A stretch of 64,000 nt of DNA from IMGVR_UViG_3300042340_000379:143856-207855, one strand, 5' to 3'; numbered from the stretch's first letter, positions 32,409-58,071 are shown. Numbers and translations: made by a program. The notes: a model not told the origin generated them from the sequence alone.

Positions 32409-32552
32409 GGGCCATAAAAGGCCCGACGCGGGCCCTAATCGGACTTTCTAGGGCCCTAAAGGGCCCAACGCGGGACGTGAAGGGCCCTTCACGGGACATA
32501 GACGGCCCGACGCGGGCCCTAAAGAGACCAAAAAGGGCCCGTGAAGGGCCCT
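32409..32552 (-). repeat. GGGCCC/AAGTCC array with about 10.5-bp period, copy 1 (inverted relative to the others)
   Basis: GGGCC or GGGAC cores every 10-11 bp, upstream of parM. Confidence 0.85.
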
Positions 32553-32577
32553 AGGCAAACTTGTATCGTACAAAAAC

Positions 32578-32961
32578 CTAAGCCCAGATTACATTCCCAG
32601 GGCGAAAGTTGGCATTAGTATCAATGCGCTTAAGCTGCAATCCGGCTGGCTCTCCTAGCTCTTGCTTAAATTCGCTATAAGAACCAAACTCAATCTTAAC
32701 GCCCCGCTCCTGGTAATAAGGATCATGCTTGATCTGGGCTCGTAAACTCTGCCACTTCTTATATAGATCCTCATTCGTCTGGCGGCTGCACTCGCAAACC
32801 CTAAGAGTCTTGTTGTATAAGGCGCGAGGACTAGCTTTTCTATCCTTCCCGCAGCTAATACATATAATAGAGTAGCGAGCGTCAGAACCGTAATCTCCAA
32901 CCTCCCATCCATTAACGATTGAAGGAACCTGCTTTGTGGGTCGTCCGCGATATCGCTTCAT
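32578..32961 (-). CDS. HNH-related endonuclease-like protein
   Basis: CxxC...CEC zinc motif, YQERGVKI...LKRIDTNANFRPGNVIWA. Confidence 0.65.
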   Translation of the reverse strand: MKRYRGRPTKQVPSIVNGWEVGDYGSDARYSIICISCGKDRKASPRALYNKTLRVCECSRQTNEDLYKKWQSLRAQIKHDPYYQERGVKIEFGSYSEFKQELGEPAGLQLKRIDTNANFRPGNVIWA

Positions 32962-33075
32962 TTTAAGTAAGGGGTAAACGCAACCTCTTTAGTTTAAGTT
33001 GTAAGCCGCAATATAGAAAGGGTTTTTAAAAACAACATCAAAATAAGTGCTACTTTAACTCCACACTATTTCAAG

Positions 33076-33118
33076 AAAGGGGCCGCTAGATCTATTAGAT
33101 CTAGCGGCCCCTTTTTTT
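33076..33118. terminator. strong bidirectional hairpin
   Basis: AAAGGGGCCGCTAGATCTA-T-TAGATCTAGCGGCCCCTTTTTTT. Confidence 0.75.
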
Positions 33119-33131
33119 GAGCAAATCTAGG

Positions 33132-33259
33132 TAAGTATTTATACTTACGATCACAAAGCTGGAGAAAATATGACGCGGATTTTAAGAGACTATCTTTAAC
33201 TAAGTATAAATACTTATGATCGCAAAGCTGGAGAAAATATGACGCGGATTTTAAGAGAC
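33132..33259. repeat. two 59-bp direct repeats (69-bp period), each starting with palindrome TAAGTAT-NN-ATACTTA
   Basis: 33132-33190 and 33201-33259 are nearly identical. Confidence 0.9.
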
Positions 33260-33577
33260 CAATTATGAGGGATATCAACTATGCCCCCCTCCGACTTTGA
33301 GAAATTCAAAGCATCGAAGGTACGGGTATGACGAGTTTGCTCACCACAATTTTTGTGCGTGAGAACAACTCATCTCTTTGATTGAATGTAATTAAACATT
33401 TCACATCAAAGACTTAGTTTATTTCTCATTCACAACACAAGCTATCTGTACTTACTCTCTTACATGAATGAGTACAGATAGCCTACCTACCACGCATCTA
33501 CACACCCAAGCCCGTGCCTACACCCTAGGCACGGGCTTCTTTTTTATTCACCTAGTACACACCAAGGAGAACACATC

Positions 33578-34119: not shown

Positions 34120-34515
34120 ATGCAATCACTCACTTCCCTTACAGCAGAACGGGATTTTAAAAAGGCCTGTTCAGAAAAGTACCAAATGGTTTCCCTAGAC
34201 AGGCGGCTTGTTTGTCAGGTAGCTCGAAAGCTACCTAAACAGCGCCGGATAAAAGCTATGGCCCACCTGCTAGAAGAGTACGGCAGGCAAGAGGCAGTTC
34301 CGACAGGCGAGCTAGTGGATAAGCTTTTTGCCCTGGATGCCGTTTATAAAATTAACGACTTGGTAATCGGGGTAGATGTGACCCTCGATAAATCTCGAAT
34401 TGTAGAAAAACGGCAAAAACTGTCTTCCTTATCTGAAGCCCACAAAGCTTTAGGTATCGACAGAACAATAGTGTTTTGTCCAAAGATCCATAAGGATCTT
34501 CAGTCTGCTCTCTAA
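34120..34515 (+). CDS. hypothetical protein, possible PD-(D/E)XK-like fold
   Basis: VDKLFALDAV...IGVDVT pattern. Confidence 0.5.
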   Translation: MQSLTSLTAERDFKKACSEKYQMVSLDRRLVCQVARKLPKQRRIKAMAHLLEEYGRQEAVPTGELVDKLFALDAVYKINDLVIGVDVTLDKSRIVEKRQKLSSLSEAHKALGIDRTIVFCPKIHKDLQSAL

Positions 34516-34588
34516 ACCCTTTAATTCATAGCCGAGCCACAGGCTTAATTGTTCATGGCAAAACGCAAACATTACCTGGAGAACATCT

Positions 34589-34789
34589 ATGTCTTTTCAT
34601 GGAATCTATTACAACCACGCCGCTTCAAACCAAGAGTGGATTCGTCGCTACACCAAAATTGTATGCATTGGCGCTTGTAAGTGCCAAGACGGGAAAAAGC
34701 GCGTGGCCTACATCGCCAGCTTTGGCGATCAGAACAAAGACTTCATCCGCCGCAAAGAAGCTGAAGCTTGGATTCAATCTAAGCTCTAA
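34589..34789 (+). CDS. small early hypothetical protein
   Basis: GGAGAAC RBS shared with neighbouring genes. Confidence 0.6.
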   Translation: MSFHGIYYNHAASNQEWIRRYTKIVCIGACKCQDGKKRVAYIASFGDQNKDFIRRKEAEAWIQSKL

Positions 34790-34863
34790 TCCCAATCTTT
34801 TTATCATGCACGCCCAGTAAAGCCTGGGCTTTTTTGTGTCTAAAACTATCTGGAGAACATCAA

Positions 34864-35313
34864 ATGTCTACTCAAATCTTTTCCACTGCCCAAGCTTGCG
34901 CCGATGAAATCGCCAAGCTTCGCGCCCAGGGCGTTGCTTGCCGTCTTCAGAAAGTTGAAGGCGGTGGCTTCACCGTCGTTCTCATGAACGGTAAAGCCCA
35001 GCCTCAGAGCAAAACTAAAGCTAAAACTGATCCTGCTCCTCACATCCAAATTCGCCAAACTCTCGATGGCGGCGTGTGGTGCAACAAGGGTGCAGGGTTC
35101 TACCCTGTCGTCAAGTTCACCTTGGATGAGGCTATCAAAGCTTTGACTGATCGGTCTTACGTAAAGACCGACAAGAACCTGGATACGAAGAACTACAACA
35201 CGACTTGGGAGTTTAGTCTTAAGTCTCTTGTAGAAAAGGATGAAGCTGAAGAGTGGGGCAATCAAAACGATATGGACGATGAGCTGTACATGAATCGCAA
35301 CGGCCTCCTCTAG
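34864..35313 (+). CDS. early hypothetical protein
   Basis: GGAGAAC RBS before ATG 34864. Confidence 0.65.
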   Translation: MSTQIFSTAQACADEIAKLRAQGVACRLQKVEGGGFTVVLMNGKAQPQSKTKAKTDPAPHIQIRQTLDGGVWCNKGAGFYPVVKFTLDEAIKALTDRSYVKTDKNLDTKNYNTTWEFSLKSLVEKDEAEEWGNQNDMDDELYMNRNGLL

Positions 35314-35383
35314 TCAACAACCTTTTATCACGCACGCCCAGTAAAGCCTGGGCTTTTTTGTACTTATTTAGCGGAGAACTTCA

Positions 35384-35563
35384 ATGGCCCTCTTTCTCTT
35401 CATTCTCTTTTTCATTTCCCTCTGTCTTTTCTTTGCAGAGGACAAAGTAAGCCAACCCAGAATTACGCCTGACATGCTCCTTAGCAAAAAAGGCAAGCCT
35501 CTATATGGGGCAACTTTGCAGGCTCGCATCGAAAAGCTAGAGCGAGCTGGGTACATCCTTTAG
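35384..35563 (+). CDS. 59-aa membrane-anchored protein paralogous to an N-terminal segment of the adjacent RNAP (not in the ORF track)
   Basis: GGAGAAC RBS; MALFLFILFFISLCLFFAEDKVSQPRITPDMLLSKKGKPLYGATLQARIEKLERAGYIL. Confidence 0.75.
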   Translation: MALFLFILFFISLCLFFAEDKVSQPRITPDMLLSKKGKPLYGATLQARIEKLERAGYIL

Positions 35564-35637
35564 TTCACAGCCGAGCCACAGGCTTAATTGTTCATGGCAA
35601 TTTTCAAGCAACAACTAATCAACTGGAGAACAAACCC

Positions 35638-38600
35638 ATGAAATCCTTCACCAAATCTCTGAATTCTTTTGTTACCCGCTCCTTCTCTGTGGGTAAGCGC
35701 CAAATGATCTCTAAGGTCAAAATCGTTCACTCTAAGCGCGAGTTCATCTCGCGTGTTTCTGGCACCTTTCGCCAGCGCTTGAACCCTGCTACTCCAAAGT
35801 CCATTTTTGCTTGGGACGATGTTCAGCTCTCCTTAGCCTTTACTTATGGCCAAGGTTCTCTAGGAATCAAAGCTGACCGCGCCAACGCTGGCATTGGGTT
35901 TGGTAGTGATACCAAACCTAAATCTAAATCTGTTAAGTCCGATTCCATCAAAATCGCACACACCTTTAAGGAGATCCTCGCCCAAACCAAAGCTACCGCT
36001 GTCAAAGTCTTCGAGGCCATTTCCACCGTTTCTAAACTGATTACTCCCGATCTTCTGCTCTCTTCTACAGGTAAGCAGCTCTATGGAGCTGCTCTTAAAA
36101 ACCGGATTGCCAAACTTGTTCGTGAGGGCTACGCAGCCCCTGTTTCTCAACCTGCAGCGGTAAAGGCCGTTGACTTCATGGCGCTTGCTCAAGAGCGCTG
36201 CGCCCAAAGCCTTGCTGCGATCGAAGCAGCTATGGGCTTCACATCCACGGGCACCGTTGTGGCCATGCTTCAATCCGGCCAGGAGCCTGCGCCCATTGCG
36301 CGGCAGTCCGCCTCAAATATGGAGAACATCTCATTGTTTGAACTCAGGGCAAAAGAATTTCCAGCTCCTTCTGTCGAGGAGCTAATGTCTGACCTAAATG
36401 GCGATCGCGCCACCCGCGCTGAAAAGTGCAAAGCCATCTTGGCTAAGCACAACCTCAACACAGTTGGTGAGCTGATCGCTCGCGGCATGGTGTCTCGCAC
36501 CCGCAAAGACTTCTGGCTCGATAGTGCAAGCACTGCGTTCAGTGTGATGCTACTGGGCCACACTCTTGGCCAAATGCCCGCGCCTCTGGACTTCAAGGCT
36601 GGGAATACCTACCTGGTAGGTTTCCCTCTGTTTGATCGCACCTCTGGCGACAAGCAGATTTCCCCGTACAAGTGCGTCATAGGAGATATCGATCTCCTGA
36701 TGGCGTCTGTTCGTAGAGAAGAGCACGACATAAAGAACCTATCTTCTCCTGCTACCAAGAAGGTGTTTAAGAAGCACTTTAAGGTGCTAGAAGATAACTG
36801 CAAAGCCCTGGGCCTGTGGTTGTCTAAGGACGAAGTGGCTAACATGGCCGCTGCGTTGGCCATTAATGAAGTGGCTACCAAGCCCACCACTTTCGCGGTG
36901 CTGGCTTCCCACCTCTGCGAAGTCCTTGATGCTATGGGCATGATGCCCAACCGCGTGTATGCGGTGAATGCTGCGTGGAACCTTCCCCGCTACAAAGCGG
37001 ATCGCGTTATTGTGCGTAAGTTGGTAACCGCACTGCTGCGGGCCCAAGAGGGCATCGGCATGACAGGGTTCAAGTTCATCGACATGTCCACCAGCGAGCA
37101 AACTGGTGAGCTATTTGATGAAGTCGTTATCTGTGGCCAACGCTTTGTCATGGATGACGAAGGCGTTATCTTTGATGACGCAGGTACATCAAAACGGCTA
37201 AACCAGATAATGTTGGCTGCTCCCATTAAGGTAGGCCGCAGTCTACACCCCAACGAGTTCTCTATCTTGAGCGCTCACGACGTGTTGTTGTATCTGCTGG
37301 ACAACATTGTGCTGCCCATGCTCAACCGAAAGGATGTCAAATCTGACAAGAGCTTGGAAATCAGCCGTGTTGAGGAAACCAACGCTCGTGCTGCCCAGTC
37401 CATCAAATCGTTTATTGGCAAATCCATGCCTCTAAACGAGCGGGCTGTTGCGCTTGGTGTTGAAGATGCTGCCTCCAGCATTCTGACCAGCGGCGAAATC
37501 AGCTGCGTTGTCAAGTGGCATCAATCTCTCTTCCGTCGCAACATTGCGGCTGAGGGTTCAGCAGAGATCGCCATCTTCAAAGAAGGCATGCTAGTTGGGC
37601 CTGATAGTCCCTACAAACGCTCGGCTGATGCTACCGAGTATATGATCTTTAGCCAAATGGAGTTAAAGACCTCCACCAATTTCACCGACTATCACCCTCT
37701 CATCGAGCCTATGATCGCTCATGGCAAAGTGATTCAGCCTTTTGGCAACATGAATGCTGTAAGCCTTTCTGCTCACGGTACTCACTATGCCAACCTTGAT
37801 GTGAGCATTCAGAAAGAAGCTGTCAAAGCTTTCTGGGCTAACCAAGGCCTTGATGAGCAACAGCTGCGCTCTAAGTTCAACCTTGAAGGTGTAGTCGGTG
37901 ATGTGTGGATGCACATTGCTGAAGAAACCCTCAACTTCTTGTCCTACAAGGGCTCTAAGCGTTTCAAGCGCTCGGCTAACTTGTACGCTCAAGTCACCAG
38001 CTTCGCGTTTGAAGAGACCAGCCGCTTCCAGTGGTCTGGTCACGTTGATCACCAGATCACCGGCCTGGCGCTCAAGGCTGTGTTAGCTCCTAGCTACGTT
38101 TTCTCTGGGCCTGGTATGGCCTATATGAACTCGCACAAGCGTGCTCAATACGAGATGCGCTACCCCTTGGCTGGTGGCATGCATGACTACTACGATCGCG
38201 CTGCTGTGTTCAGTAACTTCGCGATTGATGATACTGCTATCATCACCAATCCTCTCACGGGCTGGAGCCATATTGACCTGGACATCAAAGTCCGGGAAGG
38301 GCAGGAGACTGGCTTGTTTATCGTGAACGAACATGGCCATCAGGTTCCTCTAAAAGCTGAGCACAATGGTGTGCTTTGCAAAATTCGTTTCCGCACTGTC
38401 GATAAGTTCTCCGTTAACGGCGTATTGGAGTGTCGCCTCTTTTATAAAGTGTCTGAGTACGACTTCAAACTGCGGGCTGGCTATAAAGCCATGACTACCT
38501 ATCATGACGGGTCGATCTTTGACCATAACGCCTACGCTCCCGAGTGGGACATCATCATCCCTGGTGATGCCAACAAAACCCTCGACCTTTTAACTTGCTT

Positions 38601-41127
38601 CCTCCCCGAGGCTGCTGAGTCATTCGGTCGCGCTCCTGAGGGCACTTTGGTTGATGGCGTTGATGTACGTGCCCTGCTGCGTTCACTTAATGCTGAGGCA
38701 TTTGGTCGTGAGGGCATCATTAAAGATGCGCCCAACGACAGCCTCTATGTCAACATGCTCATGTTGAATGAGGGTCGCTACGAGCAACTCCGTAAGTTGT
38801 TCATGACCGCATTTGGTCAAGTTATATGGATGAGCGTTGAGTCTGTAGAAATGCAGATCTTTGTCAACAAATTCTATTCTGCCAACGTTGCTGGTGGTGG
38901 CAAATGGCGCGAGCTGTCTGAAGCTGAGCTGGAAACAGTTGCTAAAGATGGTCTACCCAAGGGTGCTCGCGGCTTCTGCGACACCGCTGATATCAATGAC
39001 CAGAGCAACATTCTGGTTACCTACACTGAGAACGGGAAGTGCATGTCCCTTCACCGTCAGTGGGTCTACGCTTCCACGCCCGAGCTTGGCATGTACATGC
39101 TAGGTAAGCCTGAGTACACAACTGTGAGCCAGGCCGTTTCTGAATCCAGCGTTATGGGCAACGTCATCTATGACCTGGCCCTACGTAGCAACAAAGCTGC
39201 GTTGGAATTCGTCAACCGTGGCGAAATCAACCGCGTGCGCTACTCTCTTATCCATCGCCTAGCAAAAGGCCTTCCTATTGCTATTGATGGCGGCGAAATT
39301 CCTGTGATGAAAATCCAGGGCTCGATCGCTGAAATCGTGGGTAGTTGCAGCGCCAACTTGGCTGCTGCATACGCGGAAGGGCCTAACCAGTTCTTCCAAG
39401 TACTCCTGGAAATCTGCCAGGACAAAGTGCTGCGCTTTGAAGCCGACAACAGCACCTGGGTTAGCATCTACCTCCCTCTTCTCGCTTCTTACGGCGGGCA
39501 GGATCTTGAATCCAACGAAGGCATGACTCTTGCTAGCAAAGTCTATGAGTTGATGACCTCTTGGTACAACGGGGCCGACCCTAAGTCTCAGGGCATCAAA
39601 GTCATCGCGGGGGAAATCTCCAAGATGATGAATAAGTTGGCCGATGGTGGCCGGATGCAGAAGTCTTTGACCTACGGCCCTAAAGGCGTAGGTTTCAAGG
39701 TCGCCGCATTGCCCAACATTCCTACTGGGGAAGTGTGGGTCTATGCTGGCGGTGAAGTCTTTGCCAAAATGCGCAAGCTGTTTGGCAAAGACTTTGCTGA
39801 AAACGCCAAAACTGGCGATAGCTACATCGGTCTGGTGCGTGCGCCTATGACTCGTGTTGCTGTGCTCAAAGTCGTAGTCATCACCAAAGATGACAACCGC
39901 GCCTTGGCCTACAAACTCAATGGCGTGCAGGGCTACATCAGCCCATTCTCCCAGTATTTCAACATGGGAGACTTTGACGGTGATGGTGACTTGTCTATGG
40001 ACGTTAGTGATATCGTCCGTAGCGGTGAGCTTCAACAGGACTCTTTTGCGTCCATGCTCAAGTTCCAGCGGGAAACCCTGGGCTACGACATGATGCTACC
40101 CGAGTTCTGGAAGTCTGCTGCACCCGAGCAGTACTACGCCGACCACTTCTATGTACAGAGCTACACCTCTGTCATGGCTAAAATCGGTGGGCGCGGCCTG
40201 AACTTGGAATCTTCCGAGAAGGCCAACGTCATCACCCGTGCTCAACTGCTAGCCGGTGAGCACGGTGCAATCGGTCAGCAGACCGGCTATGTGTCCAGCT
40301 CATATCAAACCCAGTTCTTTATCACGCTGGCAGCTGAGATTCTGGGTCACCACAACGTAGCTGCATTCGAGTGGATTAAAGGCTCCACCTATCAAACCCA
40401 GGCCTTGTACGAAGTAGCGTTAGGCGGCTACTCTCCTGATATGTGCCGCGTGGCGTTTGGTCTTCTTGACCGCGCCTTCCGTTTGAGCACCACTCAAGAT
40501 TGGTGGCTAAAGCGTGTTGACGCTGAGGTTGCCGGTATGTTGCTTGACGGTACCAAGCACACAGCTTCTTCTCTCCTAGGTACCGAGCCTATGGATAAAG
40601 AGAAGACCCTGTTCACTTCCCTGAGTGAAGGCCAAGTGTTCCCCGCAATGCAGGCTTGCGGTTTTGGCTGGAATGGCTTTGAGGATGACCGCAACCAAGT
40701 GCAACAGTTTGTTAAAGCTGCTGCGCTCGCTGGCGTTGCTAAAAAGCGTGTCAGCGAAATCAAGAACGATGATGCTGGAATTGGTAGCGGCACCTACCAA
40801 AAGCTGGTGAAAACCTACGGCAAGAACATGGCCCTTGTCATGTGTCTTGCTCAACGTCTAATGGACATCAGCCGTAATAAGGCTGAGTTTGGTAAGGACT
40901 ACGACAACGAACTCCGCGCTGAACTCGACCAAATGCTCAAAGGTGTTAAAAGCGATTCTATTTCCGTCGATCTCTATCGTCGGATTGAGAAGACCCTAGA
41001 CGACTCTGTGTCCGCAGAAGTCGTAAGCTATGACAGCGCTGCTATCAACAAGCTTTGCCGCTTTGTTGAAACCGAAGACGCTGCTCCCATTACTCTGGAG
41101 GTTGCTGCCCAAGTTATCGCCAATTAA
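35638..41127 (+). CDS. single-chain two-barrel DNA-dependent RNA polymerase (non-virion, early-expressed)
   Basis: NMGDFDGD (D1445-D1449), LVRAP (R1401), GPKGVGFKVAALP (DPBB start) and beta-like DFKLRAGYKA...WDIIIP lysine pair (K944/K950). Confidence 0.8.
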   Translation: MKSFTKSLNSFVTRSFSVGKRQMISKVKIVHSKREFISRVSGTFRQRLNPATPKSIFAWDDVQLSLAFTYGQGSLGIKADRANAGIGFGSDTKPKSKSVKSDSIKIAHTFKEILAQTKATAVKVFEAISTVSKLITPDLLLSSTGKQLYGAALKNRIAKLVREGYAAPVSQPAAVKAVDFMALAQERCAQSLAAIEAAMGFTSTGTVVAMLQSGQEPAPIARQSASNMENISLFELRAKEFPAPSVEELMSDLNGDRATRAEKCKAILAKHNLNTVGELIARGMVSRTRKDFWLDSASTAFSVMLLGHTLGQMPAPLDFKAGNTYLVGFPLFDRTSGDKQISPYKCVIGDIDLLMASVRREEHDIKNLSSPATKKVFKKHFKVLEDNCKALGLWLSKDEVANMAAALAINEVATKPTTFAVLASHLCEVLDAMGMMPNRVYAVNAAWNLPRYKADRVIVRKLVTALLRAQEGIGMTGFKFIDMSTSEQTGELFDEVVICGQRFVMDDEGVIFDDAGTSKRLNQIMLAAPIKVGRSLHPNEFSILSAHDVLLYLLDNIVLPMLNRKDVKSDKSLEISRVEETNARAAQSIKSFIGKSMPLNERAVALGVEDAASSILTSGEISCVVKWHQSLFRRNIAAEGSAEIAIFKEGMLVGPDSPYKRSADATEYMIFSQMELKTSTNFTDYHPLIEPMIAHGKVIQPFGNMNAVSLSAHGTHYANLDVSIQKEAVKAFWANQGLDEQQLRSKFNLEGVVGDVWMHIAEETLNFLSYKGSKRFKRSANLYAQVTSFAFEETSRFQWSGHVDHQITGLALKAVLAPSYVFSGPGMAYMNSHKRAQYEMRYPLAGGMHDYYDRAAVFSNFAIDDTAIITNPLTGWSHIDLDIKVREGQETGLFIVNEHGHQVPLKAEHNGVLCKIRFRTVDKFSVNGVLECRLFYKVSEYDFKLRAGYKAMTTYHDGSIFDHNAYAPEWDIIIPGDANKTLDLLTCFLPEAAESFGRAPEGTLVDGVDVRALLRSLNAEAFGREGIIKDAPNDSLYVNMLMLNEGRYEQLRKLFMTAFGQVIWMSVESVEMQIFVNKFYSANVAGGGKWRELSEAELETVAKDGLPKGARGFCDTADINDQSNILVTYTENGKCMSLHRQWVYASTPELGMYMLGKPEYTTVSQAVSESSVMGNVIYDLALRSNKAALEFVNRGEINRVRYSLIHRLAKGLPIAIDGGEIPVMKIQGSIAEIVGSCSANLAAAYAEGPNQFFQVLLEICQDKVLRFEADNSTWVSIYLPLLASYGGQDLESNEGMTLASKVYELMTSWYNGADPKSQGIKVIAGEISKMMNKLADGGRMQKSLTYGPKGVGFKVAALPNIPTGEVWVYAGGEVFAKMRKLFGKDFAENAKTGDSYIGLVRAPMTRVAVLKVVVITKDDNRALAYKLNGVQGYISPFSQYFNMGDFDGDGDLSMDVSDIVRSGELQQDSFASMLKFQRETLGYDMMLPEFWKSAAPEQYYADHFYVQSYTSVMAKIGGRGLNLESSEKANVITRAQLLAGEHGAIGQQTGYVSSSYQTQFFITLAAEILGHHNVAAFEWIKGSTYQTQALYEVALGGYSPDMCRVAFGLLDRAFRLSTTQDWWLKRVDAEVAGMLLDGTKHTASSLLGTEPMDKEKTLFTSLSEGQVFPAMQACGFGWNGFEDDRNQVQQFVKAAALAGVAKKRVSEIKNDDAGIGSGTYQKLVKTYGKNMALVMCLAQRLMDISRNKAEFGKDYDNELRAELDQMLKGVKSDSISVDLYRRIEKTLDDSVSAEVVSYDSAAINKLCRFVETEDAAPITLEVAAQVIAN

Positions 41128-41133
41128 TCGCTA

Positions 41134-41286
41134 GGGCCCTATAGGGCCCGCAAAAGTCCGATTGGGGCCCAACGCGGGCCCTTTACGTCCCGTGAAAGTC
41201 CTTTTAGGGCCCGCGTTGGGCCTTTCATGTCCCGTCGAGGGCCCTAAACGTCCCGCAAAAGTCCGATTAGGGCCCGTCAAGGGCCC
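41134..41286 (+). repeat. GGGCCC/AAGTCC array, copy 2
   Basis: 10-11-bp spaced cores immediately after the RNAP stop. Confidence 0.85.
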
Positions 41287-41618
41287 AACCCCTATTTTGC
41301 TGCGCTCTACCCTGCGCGGTTAGAGGGGGAATGTTAGTTTTATTTGTTTGTTGTTAGCAGGTTTAGCTAATGGCAGTGGGTCTGTGTGTTATGCGGTTGG
41401 GCGGCAGGATGTAGATGCTAATAGGTATTTATGGCAGCACTATTATTTAATTGGAGCCTGGTCGCAGCGATCGCGCTGTGTATCTGGCTCGACAAATGAT
41501 TTGCCGACTGCCGTCCCCTGTGCGCGATGCGTTGGGACGGCAGCGGGAGAAAGAAACGCAAATTGCCGTGACTTAATGTCCGGCAGTTTGTAATCCGTTG
41601 AATTAGAGACTTGCTGCT

Positions 41619-44848: not shown

Positions 44849-45132
44849 GTCACATTCATGGTGAACGTGCCCTCTGGGGCCTCGACTCTAATCCACTTCA
44901 AAACATAAATGCCGCTGGCGATCGCGCTGGCGGTTTTTTGCTACCTAGGAGTACCTTATGCAAGACCTCAAACTTCCCGGCTCTCTTCTTATCCGCCAAG
45001 CACGGCAGTGGAGAAGAGTCGATCACTCCCTCACCCACGCTTTACTCAAAAGCACCCAACATCTTCTCGAACGGCGAGGGATGACCGAGATTGTTTTCGA
45101 TCGCCTGGTCGAAAGACAGCCAAAAACAGCTA

Positions 45133-45285
45133 GGGCCCTTGGCGGGCCCTAAACGGCCCGTGAAAGTCCTTTTAGGGCCCGCAAAAGTCCGATTAGGGCC
45201 CGCGTCGGGCCCTTCATGTCCCGTGACGGGCCCTAAACGGCCCGCGAAAGTCCTTTTAGGGCCCGCGTTGGGCCACTTAGGGCCC
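45133..45285 (+). repeat. GGGCCC/AAGTCC array, copy 3
   Basis: Same unit vocabulary as the other arrays. Confidence 0.85.
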
Positions 45286-45322
45286 TAAGGGATATTCGGC
45301 CACCCTGCCAGGCCTCTTACAT

Positions 45323-46783: not shown

Positions 46784-46795
46784 AGATAAACCCCA

Positions 46796-47104: not shown

Positions 47105-47179
47105 GCTAAACTTAAATATCGACAGAATATGTAACCCCGGCCCTCAAAAGCTGGGGTTTTTTGTGGCTAAAATAGGGTC

Positions 47180-47353
47180 GGGCCCTAAACGGCCCGCGAA
47201 AGTCCTTTTAGGGCCCGCGAAAGTCCTTTTAGGGCCCGCGTTGGGCCACTTAGGGCCCGTCAAGGGACGTAAAGGGCCCGCGTTGGGCCGTTTAGGGCCC
47301 GTGAAAGTCCGTTCATGTCCCACGCTGGGCCCTAAACGGCCCGCCAAGGGCCC
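47180..47353 (+). repeat. GGGCCC/AAGTCC array, copy 4
   Basis: Same unit vocabulary as the other arrays. Confidence 0.85.
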
Positions 47354-47570
47354 TAGCCTTTTTCCAGCAGCCATTCACGGCAGGTTGAGTTGGGAGATTC
47401 GCAGTGGCACTGCCTACCACCCACGGGTTGAGGGTGGCACGACCGACCAAAACGCCGAAAAGCGAGACAACGTCGTCCCCTAACTCAACTGCAGAGCCCT
47501 TAGCTTCGGCTGAGGGTTTCTGCTATCAGCCAGCAGCCAGTCACGGCAGGGTGTAATGGAGAACTTAACC

Positions 47571-48023
47571 ATGAACCTAAGACCTTTCACACCCGCGATC
47601 GCGCTTCTAGCCTGTGGATTCCTATTCTTAGGTGCAAGCCGCAAACCCAGTCAGGTTAGCAGTTTCGACAGTATCCGCCGCGCTGGTGAACTACATGTTG
47701 AAGTGCTTTCCTGCAATGGGCAGACCTGTACGCTAAAGGCTGGTAATGAAGTTCGTCGCGTAATCAGCCCTGAGCAGCTCGCTCCTGGTACCGGTATGGC
47801 ACGAATATCTAACCAAGCTGGTACGTTGAGCGTCTCGACTTTTGTACGGGACAAAATTCCAGCAGCCAGTCTCGGCATTGTGGAGCGGGTTCTATATATA
47901 GAAAACGCCCGCATTGTCTTTATTGCAGGCGCTGATATTACCTATTTATCCGATGACTGCCAGGTCGGCCAAATGGCCACTAGCCAAGGCAGCGACTCAG
48001 CTGTTTGCCACAAGCAGAAATAA
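47571..48023 (+). CDS. exported hypothetical protein
   Basis: Signal-like N-terminus; GGAGAAC RBS. Confidence 0.6.
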   Translation: MNLRPFTPAIALLACGFLFLGASRKPSQVSSFDSIRRAGELHVEVLSCNGQTCTLKAGNEVRRVISPEQLAPGTGMARISNQAGTLSVSTFVRDKIPAASLGIVERVLYIENARIVFIAGADITYLSDDCQVGQMATSQGSDSAVCHKQK

Positions 48024-48124: not shown

Positions 48125-48168
48125 AGTGAGTCCAAGAATCCTCACGCCTTTAGGCTGAGGAGTGTCAA
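48125..48168 (+). mobile_element. isolated IS200/IS605 right-end fragment
   Basis: Exact 44-bp reverse complement of 23031-23074, ending TGTCAA. Confidence 0.8.
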
Positions 48169-48303
48169 TGATTGGTTCACACCTAACCTTCTACGGAGGG
48201 TTAGCTGAGGCCCTGTCATGCCTCACGCTTGCGGCCATTCTCGGCAGTAGGCAAGAGTTCCCTGTTTACCACGTTTACCTTTACCCTAAGAGATCCTAAA
48301 ACT

Positions 48304-49316: not shown

Positions 49317-49353
49317 AAAAGAGGGCCTGACGTATTGTCGGGCCCTCTTTTTT
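49317..49353. terminator. intrinsic terminator
   Basis: AAAAGAGGGCCTGAC-GTATT-GTCGGGCCCTCTTTTTT. Confidence 0.7.
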
Positions 49354-49415
49354 GACTGCCAACCGGACTTTAGGGCAAACAGCCCCAGTTTCCTGGAGTA
49401 GCAACAGAATAGCTA

Positions 49416-49640
49416 GGGCCCGCGTCGGGCCCTAAAAGGCCCGTGAAAGTCCGATTAGGGCCCACGTCGGGCCCTAAAAGGCCCGTGAAAGTCCGATTAG
49501 GGCCCGCCAAGGGCCATGAAGGGCCCGCGTCGGGCCGTTTAGGGCCCGTGAAAGTCCTTTTAGGGCCCGAGGGGGTAAAGTTGGGCCCTTGGCGGGCCGT
49601 TTAGGGCCCGTGAAAGTCCTTTTAGGGCCCGCCAAGGGCC
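49416..49640 (+). repeat. GGGCCC/AAGTCC array, copy 5 (longest)
   Basis: Contains an internal 42-bp duplication. Confidence 0.85.
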
Positions 49641-50174
49641 ATAGCTATTTTGGCGATAAAATACAAAGAGTGAAGAAGAGAGAAAGTCTATGTCTGAATT
49701 AACAGGAAACACGTTCGGTAAAGCAGGTACGCGCTATAAGCTCTGCGTTAATCTGGCCAATAGATAGTGAAGCTGATAAATATAATCCAGAGGGCGATCG
49801 GTATGAGTACGTTAGGCTCGCCAAAGATTCAGAAGGGTGTTACGTCGCGGATTGCTTTATAGAAAACCAGGACGGGAAGCGGCATCCTGGTTACATACAA
49901 GAACCCATTCGTTTCTTAGCCGTGATGCAGCTTGAATTACAGATCTATCTATTCCACATGCGTAATGCTTATGGATTGAGCGTCACAGTCGTAGCAGCAG
50001 AAAGTTACGACGATGCGATCGCCATGGCGGCTACAGAAGAGGGATACTCTGTTGAAGAGTATTTGAGCTTCGGCGTAAAACACCAGATTCTAACTGCCAC
50101 TGAAAAAGCAGTGTTACTCTCCAAGTAAGGAATAAAAGCTATGACCTGTCTGGACGTAGCCTAGCTATTCCAGC

Positions 50175-52571: not shown

Positions 52572-52742
52572 CGAGGAAACCATGGCCAATACTGACGATC
52601 TAATTTATTATCAAATGAGCTTACGTTTGCAATTAGAACTAGGTCTATCACTTATGAGATTTAAGTCGTAGCGCCTGACCTGAAAACTAGGCTCTGATTA
52701 ACCCGCCGAAACCGCTCAGTTACCCTGGGCGGTTTTTGCGTT

Positions 52743-52895
52743 GGGCCCTAAAAGGCCCGTCAAAGTCCTTTTAGGGCCCGCTGTGGGACGTTTAGGGCCC
52801 GTCAAAGTCCTTTTAGGGCCCAACGTGGGCCTTTTAGGGCCCGTCAAAGTCCTTTTACGTCCCGCCAAGGGCCGTTTAGGGCCCGCGTTGGGCCC
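52743..52895 (+). repeat. GGGCCC/AAGTCC array, copy 6
   Basis: Same unit vocabulary as the other arrays. Confidence 0.85.
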
Positions 52896-52938
52896 TACCT
52901 AGTTTTTTGGTAAAATAGAAAGATACCCATGGTCGAGA

Positions 52939-53796: not shown

Positions 53797-53867
53797 ACTT
53801 GTTTTTTGACGAGGCAACCACTCACCCCTGAGCCTCGCAGGGGATGCCCAAAAGGAGGGCGAAGATT

Positions 53868-56800
53868 ATGCACCTTAAGCCTTTTATGTCTCCCGAAGAC
53901 AGCCCCAATATGTATTTTCTCGAACTACAGCAGCAGAATCATCCAGAGCTTTTGCCCGGAGAGTTATTCCTCTCCAACGTAAAAATGGAACGCGTCGCCG
54001 CGATTGAGGCTGGCGAGGACGAGTTCTACAGCCAGTACGAAGGCGTCCGTGTCGGGGCAATGGCCTACGACAGTCTGCGCAGACACAGACCCAACGAGCG
54101 CCCCGTCTTTCATCGGGGCTACAGAAAATCGCATACAACCAACTACTAAACCAAGAAGGGCGAAGACGATGATCGACACTATCATTCGAGTCGTGTGTAT
54201 AGCTGGCCTGGTCGGGATCGCAATCGCGGCCATCAAGTCAAAGCCCAGCGGTCAGCGCCGGATCAATAATGGGAGGCCGGGGCGACGTATTCGATAGCGC
54301 GATCGCCCACAACCTGACCATATAACCACACTACGGGATTCGCCCCGATAGAGCGATCGGAGAAGTGATGACAAAAGAGATAGAGCGACCCGCCTTTAGG
54401 GAGATCGCAAGTCGGCGCAAGGAGCAGCAGGAAGAGCGTTTAGAGGCCATGCGATCGGAGGCTAAAGCTGGCCATCCGCAATGGCTACAATTCCAAGAGG
54501 CTGTAGAAAGCATTAAAACTACTAGTGTCGCTAAAGTTGAATTAGATCTAGGCAATTATTACGGGACTCTAACCGTAAAGGTAGTGAGCGATCAGCACTA
54601 TGTTGGACTGGAGAACTGGAACGGCTGGTCTTGGCTACCCATCTCGAAGGCGCTATACGACCTATTGATCCAAGAGCTAGGTGGCAGCTAACCCATCAAT
54701 ATAAAAGACTGGTATCAATTGCATAATTTTCACTAGAGGAACAATCATGAAAACTTTGACCGTTAGAAGCGTCGACACAGATCTCAACCTGGTTGAAATT
54801 AACGACGGAGTTCTCGTCGGGTACGAGCATTTCTGTTCGATCGCAGACACTCTACCATATAAAGGAGACGTATACAAGTATGAAGGCTCTGCCCAAATGG
54901 GCGGGCAGCTAACGAAGGCCACCAAGATTCAATCATGATCAACACCACCATCCCAGCCATCTGCTTCTTCGCAGAGGCCTATCGCGACAACAACCGCATG
55001 ACCAAGGCCTACGTAGGCTATTGGGAGAAGTGGTTCTGGCATATTGGAGTTAGCGGGAAGGTGCCCCGCGACCCGACCAAGACGCCTGCCCATGCGATCG
55101 TCCACTACATCCCAGGTGGTCTTTACAAGGTGTTTCCTGGCACTCTAGGAGAAGACCCCACGGTATGTTTCAAGAAGGCCATGATCTATGCCTTAGGGCA
55201 GCATCGGCCATTCAAAAGCGACCCTTCGGTTTGCCACGATCGCTGGCAGAATGAGATATTACCCGCGATCGCGGAACTACAACAACAATTGGAGGCAGTC
55301 CATGTATAAACTTTACGCCCAGCAGTGGAACACATTCATTAAAGAAGGGACTCAGCAAGAGTGCTTGGATGAGGCGATCGCTCGAGGGTGGATAAATCCA
55401 ACGCCCGACACACGACCCGAAAATTGGTATTGTACCGACAGTTTTGCCAATGCCTATTGCAGCATCCGACTTGCTACCGAAGCTTGAATGACAATCACAA
55501 CAACAATTGGAGAATTCCCATGAGAGCCATCGACGACCCAGCCCGTTATGACACCCAGAACTGCCGGGTGTACCGAGTAAACATTGAAACGGGTGCTTAC
55601 GAACTGATCCAGACTGGATCAGTCAAAGCTATGGATCAACTGGTTCGAGACAACATTGGCGAGTACGAATACCCACTCACCATGTACTAGACCAACGATC
55701 GCGACGTGCCAGATGCTCAGAAAATTGCAGAATTTTGCGCGTACATCAAAGGTGGAAAATGAGCGATCGCACGAACCATGGCGAGCTAGAGGTAATGCAA
55801 CTCAAAAGGATGCAGCCATACCTCGAAGCCCACGGCATAACCAGTCCTAAGAAGATTGACAACTACTGGATGGGCCACTACCCAGACGGGACGAATCAAG
55901 TAATTCCCAGCAGGGTTTACGAGCCGCCGTTCCCTGGGTAGCCGATCCATCAACCACCCCGATCGCGCCCTTCCATCCTGCATAGCCCAGGCTCCCACCA
56001 GTCTGGGCCTGACCACGTCCACTACAAGCAAATGCCCAAGGAGGGCGAAGACGATGAAACTCTTTATGGCACCTGACGAAGTATTCCAAGAATGGCCTAA
56101 TATTTTTCAAGATGAAACGTTAATTGAAACGAGTGATGAAAAGTACCTCTGTGCTCAAGCGTTATCAGCGTGGGCTATGGTGTGTGGCCAGAGGGGAGAA
56201 GTACCGACAAATTTTGGAGATGTGCTAGCTAAAGTTGCGAATAGACTTGGTGTTTCGGGAACGCCTGATTCTTTCTCTGATTTTGCTAAAGAAAAAGGCT
56301 GGATTACTTGACATGCGAAACGCCCAAAAAATTACATACGACCAACTACTAACCAAATAAGGAAATCAACACTGATGTATAAAAACGCGATTGATAGCAA
56401 GAAAGTTGAACTAAAAGCCCAGAGGGAACTTGAGTTCCAAAAGAATGCGGAGAGCAAAAAGGATGCAATTCTAAAAGAGATCGAAGCGACTGTCCCAATT
56501 TTCTGGGACTGCTACCAGAAACATATCAAGGCTGGATTTTCTGCCTGGTGGAATGCTGAAGATGTTTTAGGAAGTGGGTATGGCGTTCCAGGCATTGTGA
56601 TGTGGGGGCATCTATTCATAGGTGCAGAGCGAGACTCTGACCGCTGGCGGCTTCGTATTGGATCTTGGAGCAATCAGCAGCAATATACTGGTTCCATGAC
56701 AAAAATCGAGTGCCAGCCAAAGGTTTCAATCGACGCTATGAATAGCCATCGAATGGCAATTGAGGAGAGATTTTCAGAGGGTGTCCAAGAAGCAATTTCT

Positions 56801-57713
56801 CTAATTACAGCTCCCGGCAACAAATCGAGCTTTGCGTCTTGGACTGGCCCGGATGAACTGTAATCCCAAGAATGCAATTAATACTCAATATAAAGACTGG
56901 TACATACTATGCGACAGTTGACTCCTGCTCAGAAGATGGGATTTCCACTTGGAATGTATTACGTGGTTAGTGGGGTAGAAAAAATCGAACTTTTTAGAGG
57001 CCCGTACGATTACCTCTCTATAGCCGTTGGGGTGGTTAACAGTTATACAGGCAAAGGGCTCTGGGTGATGAATAGCCAAGGGCACAAGTTGGACAAAAAT
57101 AAATACCAGAACTCCGAAGGCGAAGCATGGATTGCCAGTTAAACCAGCGCTTATGTCTAACTATCAGTTTGTAGAAACTGTCCATTCAATTGTTACAGCG
57201 GTCGCTTATCCAGTCTTTTGGGTTGTAGCCGTTACGTTCTTTTGGATCGCGCTGGGAGATGAAGACTACAAAATCCACTGGGTCTTGGCACTGATCTTGC
57301 TTAGTGTCGTTTTGTTTGAAGTAGGTCTATTGCATTAAAGGAAGGTTTTTTGAGGCAAGAACATCTAGACGAGATTGCTAAGTACCTGTCTTTTTTCCAG
57401 TAGGGTTTTAAGTGCCATAACCAAGAGCACTATCATTCGCCGGATAAAGTTTGATGAACACCTGATTTTGGGAGAGTCAAGAGTGAATATTTATCTGACA
57501 AACCAGACCGCCGCTGAAATCGTTCAGATCCTTCAGCACCATCAGTATGACGGCACCTTCCCCGATCAGCGGGTAGCAATTGAACTTTTTCTGAATGCCT
57601 ATGAACAGGCATTTCAGGAAAATGAGGCAAAAGTGACAGAGGAACACAATAGCTTTTTGCGGGCACGGATGGCATCGTTCAAGGCCAGCAAGATGGCAAA
57701 CCCCCATGACTAA
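53868..57713 (+). other. hyperplastic cluster of small accessory genes (e.g. 54365-54691, 54747-54938, 54935-55309, 56054-56311, 56375-56863, 56909-57142, 57132-57338)
   Basis: Short co-oriented ORFs, shared leader repeats, dense HIP1 sites. Confidence 0.6.
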
Positions 57714-57927
57714 CCCCACCCCCGACCAACTGATTAACTTATTTCAGCCCACTCCCTGGCAAGCCGGGAACCCGCCAGGGCCGGGGTGGTATTTGGTGAC
57801 GGTAGACATTAGCGGTAGCCGGGAAACCGAGTATGCCTACTGGCTACCCGGAGCCTGGGACGATGCGGAGAATGTTGTAGCCTGGCAACCCCTGCCGGAA
57901 CCGTACCAAGGTAAGGGAAAGGCTTGA
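57706..57927 (+). CDS. DUF551-like protein
   Basis: W...P...GWYLVT...VVAWQPLPEPY. Confidence 0.7.
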   Translation: MTNPTPDQLINLFQPTPWQAGNPPGPGWYLVTVDISGSRETEYAYWLPGAWDDAENVVAWQPLPEPYQGKGKA

Positions 57928-57929
57928 TA

Positions 57930-58071
57930 GGGCCCGCAAAAGTCCTTTTAGGGCCCGTCAAGGGCCTTTTACGTCCCGACGAGGGCCCTAAAGGGCCCGC
58001 AAAAGTCCTTTTAGGGCCCGTCAAGGGCCTTTTAGGGCCCGCAAAAGTCCTTTTAGGGCCCTAAAAGGGCC
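57930..58071 (+). repeat. GGGCCC/AAGTCC array, copy 7
   Basis: Alternating 11-bp and 10-bp units. Confidence 0.85.

What the first reader, a model, noticed from the sequence alone, without database searches (positions are those of the whole stretch)
32409..58071. Seven oriented intergenic arrays with helical (about 10.5-bp) GC/AT periodicity
Seen: 140-225-bp arrays at 32.4, 41.1, 45.1, 47.2, 49.4, 52.7 and 57.9 kb, built from alternating 11- and 10-bp units (e.g. GGGCCCGCAAA AGTCCTTTTA GGGCCCGTCAA GGGCCTTTTA). Units are shuffled between copies while the phase is kept. The copy upstream of parM is inverted, so all copies point away from the 33-kb divergence. Inference: the selected property is anisotropic bendability or wrapping. 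Candidates are strong gyrase sites (as for Mu SGS) relieving supercoils from phage RNAPs, a distributed parC-type centromere for the ParR-like protein, or handles for genome internalisation.
Basis: partly seen in the sequence, partly recalled or inferred. Interest (0 to 1): 0.75.

Follow-up and report, generated by a model that had tools for sequence, protein, structure and literature searches.

The report
Seven parC-like iteron arrays, cyanophage
A large phage of cyanobacteria carries seven long, oriented arrays of a GGGCCC-type protein-binding motif spaced exactly one DNA turn apart; one array sits where a plasmid-style actin segregation system keeps its centromere, so the phage may use one DNA-binding protein both to grip its genome and to control several operons.

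Summary
Seven intergenic arrays of 145-228 bp hold 108 half-sites with core G-(G/T)-C-C. Spacing alternates strictly 10/11 bp, with 5 exceptions. These are the only places in the window with a 10.5-bp GC/AT Fourier peak: power 21-31, against at most 6 elsewhere and at most 10.9 in shuffles. Seven positions of the 21-bp unit are invariant in 50 units while the spacers vary (41 distinct units). So a base-specific protein site is selected, not bendability alone.

Array A1 is inverted. It lies directly upstream of an actin-like (ParM/Alp7A-fold) gene and a 96-aa protein with a ribbon-helix-helix-like N-terminus, a disordered linker and a conserved acidic C-tail. This is the ParMRC layout. A relative with 83% identical ALP keeps a GGGCCC array there with other spacers. 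Relatives at 62% identity or less lack it.

The other six arrays sit at operon starts, four of them after terminators and two just before -10 boxes. All seven lie within 26 kb of a 208-kb genome.

Best reading (about 0.45): parC-like centromere/operator arrays for the ParR-like protein. Binding is not shown. It is a new variant of a known kind.

The parts
32408..32552 (-). Array A1: 13 half-sites plus 1 degenerate, directly upstream of the actin-like gene (the parC position).
   Evidence: Fourier power 21.4
41133..41287 (+). Array A2: 15 half-sites. It starts a few bases after the stop codon of the 1829-aa ORF, with no terminator in between.
   Evidence: power 22.3
45132..45286 (+). Array A3: 15 half-sites.
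   Evidence: power 23.4
47179..47354 (+). Array A4: 16 half-sites plus 1 degenerate (GGGAC).
   Evidence: power 22.0
49415..49642 (+). Array A5: 21 half-sites plus 1 degenerate; the longest array, with one 20-bp phase slip.
   Evidence: power 25.9
52742..52896 (+). Array A6: 14 half-sites plus 1 degenerate (GGGAC).
   Evidence: power 24.9
57929..58073 (+). Array A7: 14 half-sites. It runs from the stop codon of the upstream ORF to about 13 bp before the ATG at 58087.
   Evidence: power 30.6
31290..32345 (-). Actin-like protein (ALP/ParM-like), 351 aa from the ATG (360 aa from the first TTG at 32372).
   Evidence: Pfam ALP_N and Alp7A_like_C, PHROG 691 'partition protein'. The AF2 model matches Ta0583, Alp7A, ParM and MreB at E 1e-10 to 1e-6. 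The phosphate-binding motifs DxGN and DIGGGT are invariant in the family.
30993..31283 (-). 96-aa candidate adaptor (ParR-like): predicted strand-helix-helix N-terminus, S/P/Q-rich disordered linker, conserved acidic C-tail G-V-E-F-S-D-I-Q-L-D-M-D-D.
   Evidence: The family is tiny, 6 representatives among 1.84 billion proteins. There is no significant match to a solved ParR.
32384..32389 (-). -10-like TATACT of the ALP operon promoter, about 22 bp downstream of the last half-site of A1. The motif TAGCTTATACT is conserved in relatives L021, L022, L024 and L279.
32558..32576 (.). TTGTA-TCG-TACAA palindrome at the distal edge of A1. It is the one remaining copy of the TTTGYAC/GTACAAA repeats that relatives without GGGCCC arrays carry upstream of the ALP gene.
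49657..49662 (+). -10-like TAAAAT, 16 bp after the last half-site core of A5.
   Evidence: read directly
52911..52916 (+). -10-like TAAAAT (TGG-TAAAAT, extended -10-like), 16 bp after the last half-site core of A6.
   Evidence: read directly
44911..44934 (+). Intrinsic-terminator-like hairpin plus T-run upstream of A3.
47133..47158 (+). Intrinsic-terminator-like hairpin plus T-run immediately upstream of A4.
49320..49354 (+). Intrinsic-terminator-like hairpin AGAGGGCC...GGCCCTCT plus T6, upstream of A5.
   Evidence: read directly
52712..52738 (+). Intrinsic-terminator-like hairpin CCGCTCAG...CTGGGCGG plus T5, abutting A6.
   Evidence: read directly

Best explanation
Each array is a landing platform for a sequence-specific dimeric DNA-binding protein. 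The protein recognises the GGGCCC-type core (minimal form G-K-C-C) and binds one site per helical turn, so 13-22 dimers line up on one face of the DNA and form a continuous, probably bent or wrapped, nucleoprotein filament.

The most likely binder is the 96-aa ribbon-helix-helix-like protein encoded just after the actin-like gene. Array A1 is then the parC centromere and operator of a ParMRC-type (type II partition-like) module. The bound adaptor would present its conserved acidic C-tails to the actin-like filament and at the same time cover the -35 region of its own promoter.

The other six arrays sit at the starts of successive rightward operons. They would be further attachment points for the same complex and would also place those operons under the same regulator.

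What is shown: the anatomy of the arrays, their selection at base level, the actin fold of the neighbouring gene, the position of A1, and conservation of a GGGCCC array at that position in a diverged relative. What is inferred: the RHH fold, which protein binds, the contact between tail and filament, and the regulatory effect.
For: 1. Strict 10/11-bp alternation over 108 sites puts all sites on one face of the helix.
2. Seven unit positions are invariant and the spacers are free, 41 distinct units out of 50, so selection is base-specific.
3. The window and its 99% relative L024 differ at two positions in A1, both in spacers.
4. The 83% relative (L021, L279) has 9-10 GGGCC(C) sites at 10-11 bp at the same place with different spacers, followed by the same -10 box.
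5. A1 lies between the ALP promoter and the next gene, which is the parC position.
6. The ALP model has the actin/ParM/Alp7A fold.
7. The 96-aa protein is predicted as a short N-terminal strand region, helix 8-23 and helix 32-48, then a disordered stretch, with a tail conserved across the family. Language-model look-alikes are mostly RHH families (RHH_1, RHH_3, RHH_6, MetJ), at lead-level scores of 0.80-0.84.
8. The putative DNA-facing strand residues differ between lineages with the arrays (K-A-T, K-V-K) and without them (R-H-T, N-R-S).
9. In known systems one ParR dimer binds each 10-11-bp iteron, the iterons double as the operator, R1 parC is intrinsically curved, and about 12 dimers make one turn of the pSK41 segrosome (PMC2241845, PMC5016525). 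The arrays here hold 13-22 sites.
10. [quoted passage not shown]
11. There is precedent for several centromere arrays that overlap promoters: omega of pSM19035 (PMC5016525).
Against: No binding evidence of any kind exists.

The 96-aa protein has no significant sequence or fold match to ParR or to any solved RHH protein. Its model is of low confidence (pLDDT 62.6).

All relatives, including the window phage, keep TTTGYAC/GTACAAA palindromes upstream of the ALP gene. These could be the real adaptor site, which would leave the GGGCCC arrays to another protein.

Known type II loci have a single parC, not seven.

Two arrays (A2, A7) abut a stop codon with no terminator and no visible promoter nearby, so 'operator' does not fit every copy.

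Only one of the seven arrays gives an independent test of orientation relative to transcription.
Confidence: 0.45

Rival explanations
1. The arrays are operator or enhancer arrays for a different sequence-specific regulator, phage or host, not yet identified. They define a regulon of early or middle operons that happens to include the ALP operon. The ParR-like protein binds only the TTGTA...TACAA palindrome.
For: Four arrays follow intrinsic terminators, and three are followed by -10-like boxes with the last site over the -35 position. The TTTGYAC palindromes are the element common to all ALP loci, with or without GGGCCC arrays. Almost all genes of the 33-64 kb block are orphans, so an unrecognised regulator could be among them.
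Against: No candidate regulator was found. The palindrome persists even though the adaptor's putative DNA-reading residues change between lineages, which argues that the adaptor does not read it. Arrays of 13-22 sites are far larger than ordinary operators and match centromere-type complexes.
Confidence: 0.27
2. The arrays are purely structural DNA. They are intrinsically curved or anisotropically flexible segments (GGGCCC in phase with T-runs) that act without a dedicated protein: as upstream promoter activators, as preferred wrapping sites for gyrase or a host nucleoid protein, or as topological barriers between operons.
For: The 10.5-bp S/W peak is very strong. GGGCCC repeats show cation-dependent gel anomalies (Brukner 1994, as cited in PMC3402463). 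T3-4 runs recur every 21 bp in phase.
Against: Seven positions are 100% invariant, and the G/T choice covaries with the preceding base (GGG, or A/C/T followed by G-T; never GGT). Bendability alone would tolerate many other S-rich words. The relative L021 keeps GGGCC(C) but changes the spacers.
Confidence: 0.1
3. The arrays are a selfish or neutral repeat family, expanded by unequal recombination and gene conversion between intergenic copies, with no function for the phage.
For: Arrays share mosaic segments of 40-110 bp at 80-100% identity. They are lineage-specific: absent from relatives at 62% ALP identity or less, and from 42 kb of the syntenic 172-kb relative.
Against: The contrast between invariant cores and free spacers indicates purifying selection. 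Array length and sequence are identical in a second sample, with 2 mismatches in 17.9 kb. Placement is consistent relative to terminators, promoters and gene direction. No transposase, terminal inverted repeats or target duplications were seen.
Confidence: 0.1
4. The arrays act as RNA. Once transcribed, they fold into multi-hairpin structures that terminate, process or stabilise mRNAs.
For: Any transcript of an array is very stable: -83 to -148 kcal/mol against -47 to -96 for shuffles. A2 and A7 are probably transcribed by read-through. GUCC can pair with GGGC by a G-U wobble only on the sense strand.
Against: There is no consistent advantage of sense over antisense: A2 folds better as antisense. 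The predicted folds are long-range and differ in every array. Units such as ACGTCCCGTGAAAGTCC cannot form the local hairpin. RNA function gives no reason for a strict 10/11-bp phase. There is no Rfam match.
Confidence: 0.05

Closest known systems
parC/ParR/ParM of plasmid R1 (type II partition)
   Same: An actin-like ATPase gene is preceded by direct 11-bp iterons that are both centromere and operator. One ParR dimer binds per iteron, the DNA is curved, and a small adaptor is encoded next to parM (PMC2241845).
   Different: R1 has 10 iterons at one locus. This phage has 108 half-sites in seven arrays spread over 26 kb, a 21-bp (10+11) super-unit, and a GGGCCC-type palindromic core. The adaptor shows no detectable sequence homology to ParR. 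The gene order is the same as in R1 (ALP, then adaptor), but the replicon is a 208-kb phage.
pSK41 parC-ParR segrosome
   Same: A continuous array of 20-bp repeats, each made of two 10-bp half-repeats and bound by a dimer of RHH dimers. About 12 dimers make one superhelical turn, with the C-tails clustered for ParM (PMC5016525). The 21-bp unit with two unequal half-sites, and the 13-22 sites per array, fit this geometry.
   Different: pSK41 has only four repeats at a single locus. The fold and binding of the phage protein are unproven.
AlpA/AlpC/alpS of Corynebacterium prophage CGP3
   Same: A phage-encoded actin-like protein with a co-transcribed adaptor that binds many short repeats in the operon's upstream region. 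It is needed for efficient phage DNA replication (PMC4446434).
   Different: alpS is a loose TTAAnnG motif concentrated at one promoter region. Here there are seven long, strictly phased arrays. The proteins show no evident homology.
Omega repressor and parS1-3 of pSM19035; dispersed KorB OB sites of RK2; dispersed sopC sites of phage-plasmid N15
   Same: One centromere-binding protein (an RHH protein in the case of omega) binds several separate iteron arrays that overlap promoters. Partition sites therefore double as a global regulatory network. In N15 and RK2 the sites are scattered over the genome (PMC5016525).
   Different: Those systems use Walker-type ParA motors and 7-bp heptads or 16-bp palindromes. 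Here the partner is actin-like and the sites are phased at 10.5 bp.
Mu strong gyrase site; E. coli BIME/REP elements
   Same: They are intergenic and bound by topology-related enzymes.
   Different: No shared sequence or architecture was found. The SGS is a single central site. REPs are imperfect palindromes without 10.5-bp phasing. Gyrase binding was not testable here.

Membership tests
Type II (ParMRC) partition locus | Actin-like (ParM/Alp) NTPase gene | tested here: met
   Pfam Alp7A_like_C scores 22.8 bits (cut-off 22). ALP_N scores 24.1 bits, just under its cut-off of 26.3. PHROG 691 'partition protein' matches at 3.7e-8. The AF2 model matches Ta0583, Alp7A, ParM and MreB at E 2e-10 to 1e-6. 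No sequence-level hit to a solved ParM.
Type II (ParMRC) partition locus | Small adaptor encoded next to the ATPase, with an N-terminal ribbon-helix-helix DNA-binding domain and a C-terminal filament-binding tail | tested here: inconclusive
   Position, size and predicted strand-helix-helix plus disordered linker plus conserved acidic tail all fit. Atlas look-alikes are mostly RHH families but only at lead level, 0.80-0.84. There is no significant PDB sequence or Foldseek match, and the monomer model has pLDDT 62.6.
Type II (ParMRC) partition locus | Tandem direct repeats of about 10-11 bp immediately upstream of the operon, overlapping its promoter (parC) | tested here: met
   A1 has 13-14 sites at 10/11 bp and ends about 22 bp before the conserved -10 TATACT.
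Type II (ParMRC) partition locus | Centromere confined to a single locus at the operon | tested here: not met
   There are seven arrays across 26 kb and none elsewhere in the 208-kb contig by three pattern scans.
Type II (ParMRC) partition locus | The adaptor binds the repeats and couples them to filaments; the locus stabilises a replicon | not testable with these tools
   Needs EMSA or footprinting, co-sedimentation and stability assays.
Omega/pSM19035-type dispersed operator-centromeres (type Ib) | Several iteron arrays overlapping promoters of different operons, bound by one RHH protein | tested here: inconclusive
   Arrays sit at operon starts: terminators precede A3-A6, and -10 boxes follow A1, A5 and A6. 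The binder is unproven, and no promoter was found next to A2 or A7.
Omega/pSM19035-type dispersed operator-centromeres (type Ib) | 7-bp heptad iterons and a Walker-type ParA partner | tested here: not met
   The unit is 21 bp (10+11). The adjacent motor is actin-like, and no ParA was found among the window proteins scanned.
Sequence-independent curved or bendable DNA (nucleosome-positioning-like, UP-like) | 10-10.5-bp periodicity of S/W content | tested here: met
   Power is 21-31 at 10.5 bp, against 6 or less in the background.
Sequence-independent curved or bendable DNA (nucleosome-positioning-like, UP-like) | Selection on composition or phase only, with no base-specific conservation | tested here: not met
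   Seven positions are invariant in 50 units, and the K position covaries with its 5' neighbour.
Strong gyrase site / BIME | Gyrase binding and cleavage; a single central site (SGS) or a REP palindrome mosaic (BIME) | not testable with these tools
   There is no assay here. The architecture differs: direct phased repeats in seven copies.
Structured RNA element | A conserved secondary structure supported across copies, on the sense strand | tested here: not met
   Folds differ between arrays and there is no sense-strand bias. No Rfam family matches.
Coding tandem repeat (heptad peptide) or CRISPR array | An open frame with codon-periodic variation; or repeats separated by unique spacers | tested here: not met
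   Five of the seven arrays have a stop in every sense frame (A4 and A6 each keep one open frame). Variation is not 3-periodic. The units are contiguous with no spacers.

The most novel reading that the evidence does not exclude
The phage runs an actin-based machine with a multi-site centromere. Seven ParR-type nucleoprotein rings along 26 kb of its early region tie that region to ALP filaments, to position, pull or partition the replicating 208-kb genome. The same rings sit on operon promoters, so genome handling and the transcription programme are mechanically coupled. This would be the first type II (actin) system with dispersed, promoter-embedded centromeres, and the first in a cyanophage.
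Probability: 0.25. Interest if true: 0.8.

Novelty: new variant of a known kind. Interest (0 to 1): 0.6.

Why it matters
Actin-like segregation systems are understood mainly from a few plasmids that carry one small centromere. Here a large phage of cyanobacteria has the same gene pair, but 108 strictly phased sites in seven arrays placed at operon starts.

If the small protein binds them, the system shows how a centromere-binding protein can be turned into a regional organiser and regulator of a viral genome. It would also give a ready-made, very regular DNA scaffold for structural work on ParR-type filaments. If another protein binds, there is an unknown DNA-coating regulator to find. Either way the arrays are a clean, testable handle on the otherwise orphan early region of an uncultured jumbo cyanophage.

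Tried and rejected
RNA structure. Sense and antisense folds are equally stable, and no structure is shared between arrays. Rfam gave no hit in the whole window, and there are no tRNAs.

Coding repeat. Rejected on stop codons and on variation that is not codon-periodic.

CRISPR-like or transposon-like element. The units are contiguous without spacers. The apparent terminal CTAGGGCCC/GGGCCCTAG symmetry is just the ordinary unit edges and is absent from several arrays.

Restriction-site avoidance or enrichment. GGGCCC outside the arrays occurs 8 times, near the roughly 10 expected by my own estimate.

Known phage relatives. Nothing in 50,697 GenBank phages by DNA or by ALP tblastn.

Pattern scans for arrays elsewhere. 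IMG/VR returned only this phage's own contig plus unrelated coding repeats and a few unrelated GGGCCC iteron clusters. They yielded only analogous arrays with no shared gene context, so they say little about close relatives.

The adaptor. Foldseek and PDB sequence search found nothing. A profile search of 1.84 billion proteins found only 6 representatives.

Arrays upstream of orthologues of other array-flanked genes. The only diverged homologue found (49% identity, on a 1-kb contig) has no array, but its synteny is unknown. A look-up meant to extend the 172-kb relative past the A2-equivalent position failed.

The motif CACGGCAGGKT downstream of A3 and A4 was checked as a possible promoter. Its enrichment is weak: 31 matches against 22 expected.

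A wedge-model curvature calculation was not run, because I had no verified parameter table.

Full report
SOURCE. The window is the last 64 kb of the IMG/VR contig IMGVR_UViG_3300042340_000379, which is 207,855 bp long. It encodes a major head protein and a portal. It also holds 25 copies of GCGATCGC. From general knowledge this is the HIP1 palindrome typical of cyanobacteria, so the sequence is most likely an uncultured jumbo cyanophage. The same phage occurs in a second sample at 99.99% identity over 17.9 kb, with no change in any array. Nothing similar exists among 50,697 GenBank phages.

OBSERVATION. Seven arrays are present at the stated places. Tandem Repeats Finder reports period-21 arrays at six of them. 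The 41.1-kb array is not in that table but is confirmed by reading and by the Fourier scan. In 150-bp windows the Fourier power of G+C content at 10.5 bp is 21.4-30.6 in the arrays. The maximum over 6159 windows outside them is 6.0, and the maximum over 20 shuffled windows is 10.9.

Laid out in register, all arrays share a 21-bp unit: A-G-G-(G/T)-C-C-C-G-y-s-w-a-(G/A)-G-(G/T)-C-C-n-T-T-T. This holds for the 32.4-kb array only after reverse-complementing it. Taking G-K-C-C as the core gives 108 half-sites. Successive cores are spaced 10, 11, 10, 11 and so on. There are five exceptions: four 21-bp gaps where a degenerate site (GGGAC or TGGTCTC) is skipped, and one 20-bp slip in A5. The arrays hold 13, 15, 15, 16, 21, 14 and 14 sites.

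Of 50 complete units, 41 are distinct, yet G3, C5, C6, C7, G14, C16 and C17 never vary. Spacer positions carry 0.1-0.7 bit. The G/T choice covaries with the base before it: GGGCC, or A/C/T followed by GTCC, and never GGTCC. The arrays are not coding and not CRISPR-like. Three different pattern scans of IMG/VR find the phage's own contig only inside window 30.6-64 kb, and together they detect all seven arrays. Seven is therefore probably the complete set for the 208-kb genome.

WHAT IS SELECTED. A strict one-turn phase alone could reflect bendability. Invariant bases next to freely drifting spacers mean that a protein reads the core.

Two comparisons support this. The window and a 99% relative (L024, L277) differ at two positions in A1, both in spacers. 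A relative whose ALP is 83% identical (L021, L279) has, at the same place, 9-10 GGGCC(C) sites at 10-11 bp. Its spacers are different (GGGCCCT rather than GGGCCCG, and no GTCC variant), and the same -10 box follows.

RNA folding gives no shared structure and no sense-strand bias, so the unit of function is double-stranded DNA.

CONTEXT. A1 lies between a small HNH-like gene and the start of an operon on the minus strand.

- The first gene of the operon is actin-like. It matches Pfam ALP_N and Alp7A_like_C and a PHROG 'partition protein'. Its DxGN and DIGGGT motifs are invariant in the family. Its AlphaFold model matches Ta0583, Alp7A, several ParMs and MreB at E 2e-10 to 1e-6.
- The next gene encodes a 96-aa protein conserved in every relative of the operon. 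It has a short N-terminal segment with alternating hydrophobic residues, helices at 8-23 and 32-48, an S/P/Q-rich disordered linker, and a conserved tail G-(V/L/M)-(E/D)-F-(S/G)-(D/E)-x-x-L-x-M-(D/E)-D.
- That is the beta-alpha-alpha plus tail plan of ParR-type adaptors (PMC5016525). A language-model search returns mostly RHH families, at scores that are only leads.
- There is no significant sequence or fold match to a solved structure. The family has only six representatives among 1.84 billion proteins.

The last site of A1 ends about 22 bp before a conserved TAGCTTATACT -10 box.

The other six arrays lie in the co-directional block to the right of the 33-kb divergence. Intrinsic-terminator-like hairpins precede A3, A4, A5 and A6. 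TAAAAT boxes follow A5 and A6, 16 bp after the last core, so the last site lies over the -35 position. A2 and A7 instead abut the stop codon of the preceding ORF, and A7 ends about 13 bp before the next ATG. The flanking genes are orphans.

RELATIVES WITHOUT ARRAYS. ALP operons at 62%, 39% and 38% identity lack GGGCCC arrays and lack any 10.5-bp peak. They are L022, L032 from a syntenic 172-kb IMG/VR phage, L033 and L023.

Upstream of the ALP gene they carry TTTGYAC/GTACAAA palindromes. In L033 these form a 16-bp repeat of 2.6 copies. The window and L021 keep one such palindrome at the outer edge of the array.

The putative DNA-facing residues of the adaptor's first strand are K-A-T (window), K-V-K (L021), R-H-T (L022) and N-R-S (L023, L032). 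The palindrome persists across these changes while the GGGCCC arrays appear only with the K-x-T/K type. This fits an adaptor that reads the arrays, but it does not prove it. It also leaves open that the adaptor reads the palindrome and that something else reads the arrays.

MECHANISM PROPOSED. In R1, ten 11-bp iterons upstream of parM bind one ParR dimer each, act as operator, and are intrinsically curved (PMC2241845). In pSK41, 20-bp repeats made of two 10-bp halves bind dimers of RHH dimers. About 12 dimers make one turn of a superhelix whose inner face presents the C-tails to ParM (PMC5016525).

The 21-bp unit here has a strong and a weaker half-site, and each array holds 13-22 sites. That fits this geometry, with at least one full turn per array. 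I therefore read A1 as a parC-type centromere and operator.

The other six arrays would be additional attachment and control points. This parallels the omega protein of pSM19035, whose three parS arrays overlap three promoters, and the dispersed sites of RK2 and N15 (PMC5016525). A phage precedent for an actin-like protein plus an adaptor plus upstream repeats is AlpAC/alpS of prophage CGP3, which is needed for efficient phage DNA replication (PMC4446434).

The periodic GGGCCC and T-run composition probably pre-bends the DNA for wrapping; GGGCCC repeats show cation-dependent gel anomalies (cited in PMC3402463).

CONFIDENCE. I put about 0.75 on the statement that a sequence-specific protein binds every turn on one face of the DNA. 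I put about 0.45 on that protein being the ParR-like adaptor, with the arrays being centromere/operator sites. The rivals are another regulator (0.27), structural DNA only (0.10), a neutral repeat family (0.10) and an RNA element (0.05).

NOVELTY. The gene pair and an upstream iteron array are a known kind. Four features are new:
- the number of sites (108) and of arrays (7);
- their placement at successive operon starts within 26 kb;
- the strict 10+11 super-unit with a palindromic GGGCCC core;
- the setting in a jumbo cyanophage, with an adaptor family unrelated in sequence to known ParRs.

Noticed in passing
window 33132-33190 and 33201-33259: A 59-bp direct repeat in two copies (93% identical) at the 33-kb divergence. 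It contains the near-palindrome GTATTTATAC and a -10-like TATACT. The same element lies beside the ALP locus in relatives L022, L023, L032, L033 and L277. It is a candidate for early promoters or an origin element. A 22-bp-arm bidirectional terminator sits just before it, at 33073-33117.
   Followed up: partly
window 32558-32576; L033 8764-8805; L032 about 9845-9885; L022 about 675-700: TTGTA-TCG-TACAA palindrome at the outer edge of A1. TTTGYAC/GTACAAA motifs are conserved upstream of the ALP gene in every relative, and form a 16-bp repeat of 2.6 copies in L033. This could be the ancestral operator or centromere, or the site of another factor.
   Followed up: partly
window 32578-32961 (-): A 127-aa protein with weak HNH-endonuclease PHROG hits. 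Its C-terminus is a degenerate HNH-like motif (KRID...GNV.W), and its N-terminus reads MKRYRGRP, which is AT-hook-like. It is conserved upstream of the array in L021, L022 and L024, so it looks like a resident gene rather than a mobile homing nuclease.
   Followed up: partly
window 47359-47555 (+): A structured non-coding stretch of about 190 nt between A4 and the next gene. It has a 12-bp closing stem and its own terminator-like hairpin; the RNA fold z-score is -2.7 and there is no Rfam hit. It is flanked by direct repeats CCAGCAGCCAnTCACGGCAGG at about 47365 and 47530, with a third copy at about 48025. It is a candidate small RNA.
   Followed up: partly
window 23030-23074 and 48125-48169: An exact 45-bp inverted repeat. 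One copy lies just after the 3360-aa ORF and the other after the gene at 47556-48023. Its function is unknown.
   Followed up: no
window 34513-34561 / 35552-35600 and 34784-34837 / 35308-35361: Two pairs of duplicated intergenic modules (92% and 87% identical). The second pair includes a terminator hairpin, GCCCAGTAAAGCCTGGGC followed by a T-run. This suggests a duplicated gene cassette in the 34.5-35.6 kb region.
   Followed up: no
window 47163-47483 (+): A 106-aa ORF, called as a gene in the JGI annotation of the same phage (L155 4222-4542), runs straight through array A4. It is probably a spurious call created by the stop-free frame of the repeat.
   Followed up: partly
window 12917-22999 and 35638-41127; L033 1-5033: Giant ORFs of 3360 aa and 1829 aa have no Pfam or PHROG match. 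At the position syntenic to the 1829-aa gene, relative L033 carries a protein of more than 2545 aa with helicase (AAA_30, UvrD_C_2), NADAR and Macro domains. No RNA polymerase was identified in the window.
   Followed up: partly
window 29901-30152 (-): A PAAR-motif protein (PHROG 281, 1.4e-9) lies in the same minus-strand gene string as the ALP and adaptor genes. The order ALP, adaptor, 268-aa protein, PAAR is conserved in L021, L034, L277 and L278.
   Followed up: no
L150 870-1100; L074 1540-1700; L144 1700-1930; L079 835-940; L261 about 7560-7700; L273 730-880; L025 and L030, L027, L028: Unrelated metagenome, MAG and viral contigs carry their own arrays of GGGCC(C) cores alternating with A/T runs at 10-11 or 21 bp. 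One example is CGGGCCCGACGAAGGCCAAAG repeated about 6 times in a Hydrogenedentes MAG, next to an Abi_alpha gene. No gene context is shared with the window. GGGCCC-type phased iterons may be a recurrent solution.
   Followed up: partly
whole window: There are 25 copies of GCGATCGC (from general knowledge, the HIP1 palindrome typical of cyanobacteria) in 64 kb at 47% G+C. The syntenic relative L032 has 15-bp-period coding repeats, which look like pentapeptide repeats. Both point to a cyanobacterial host.
   Followed up: no
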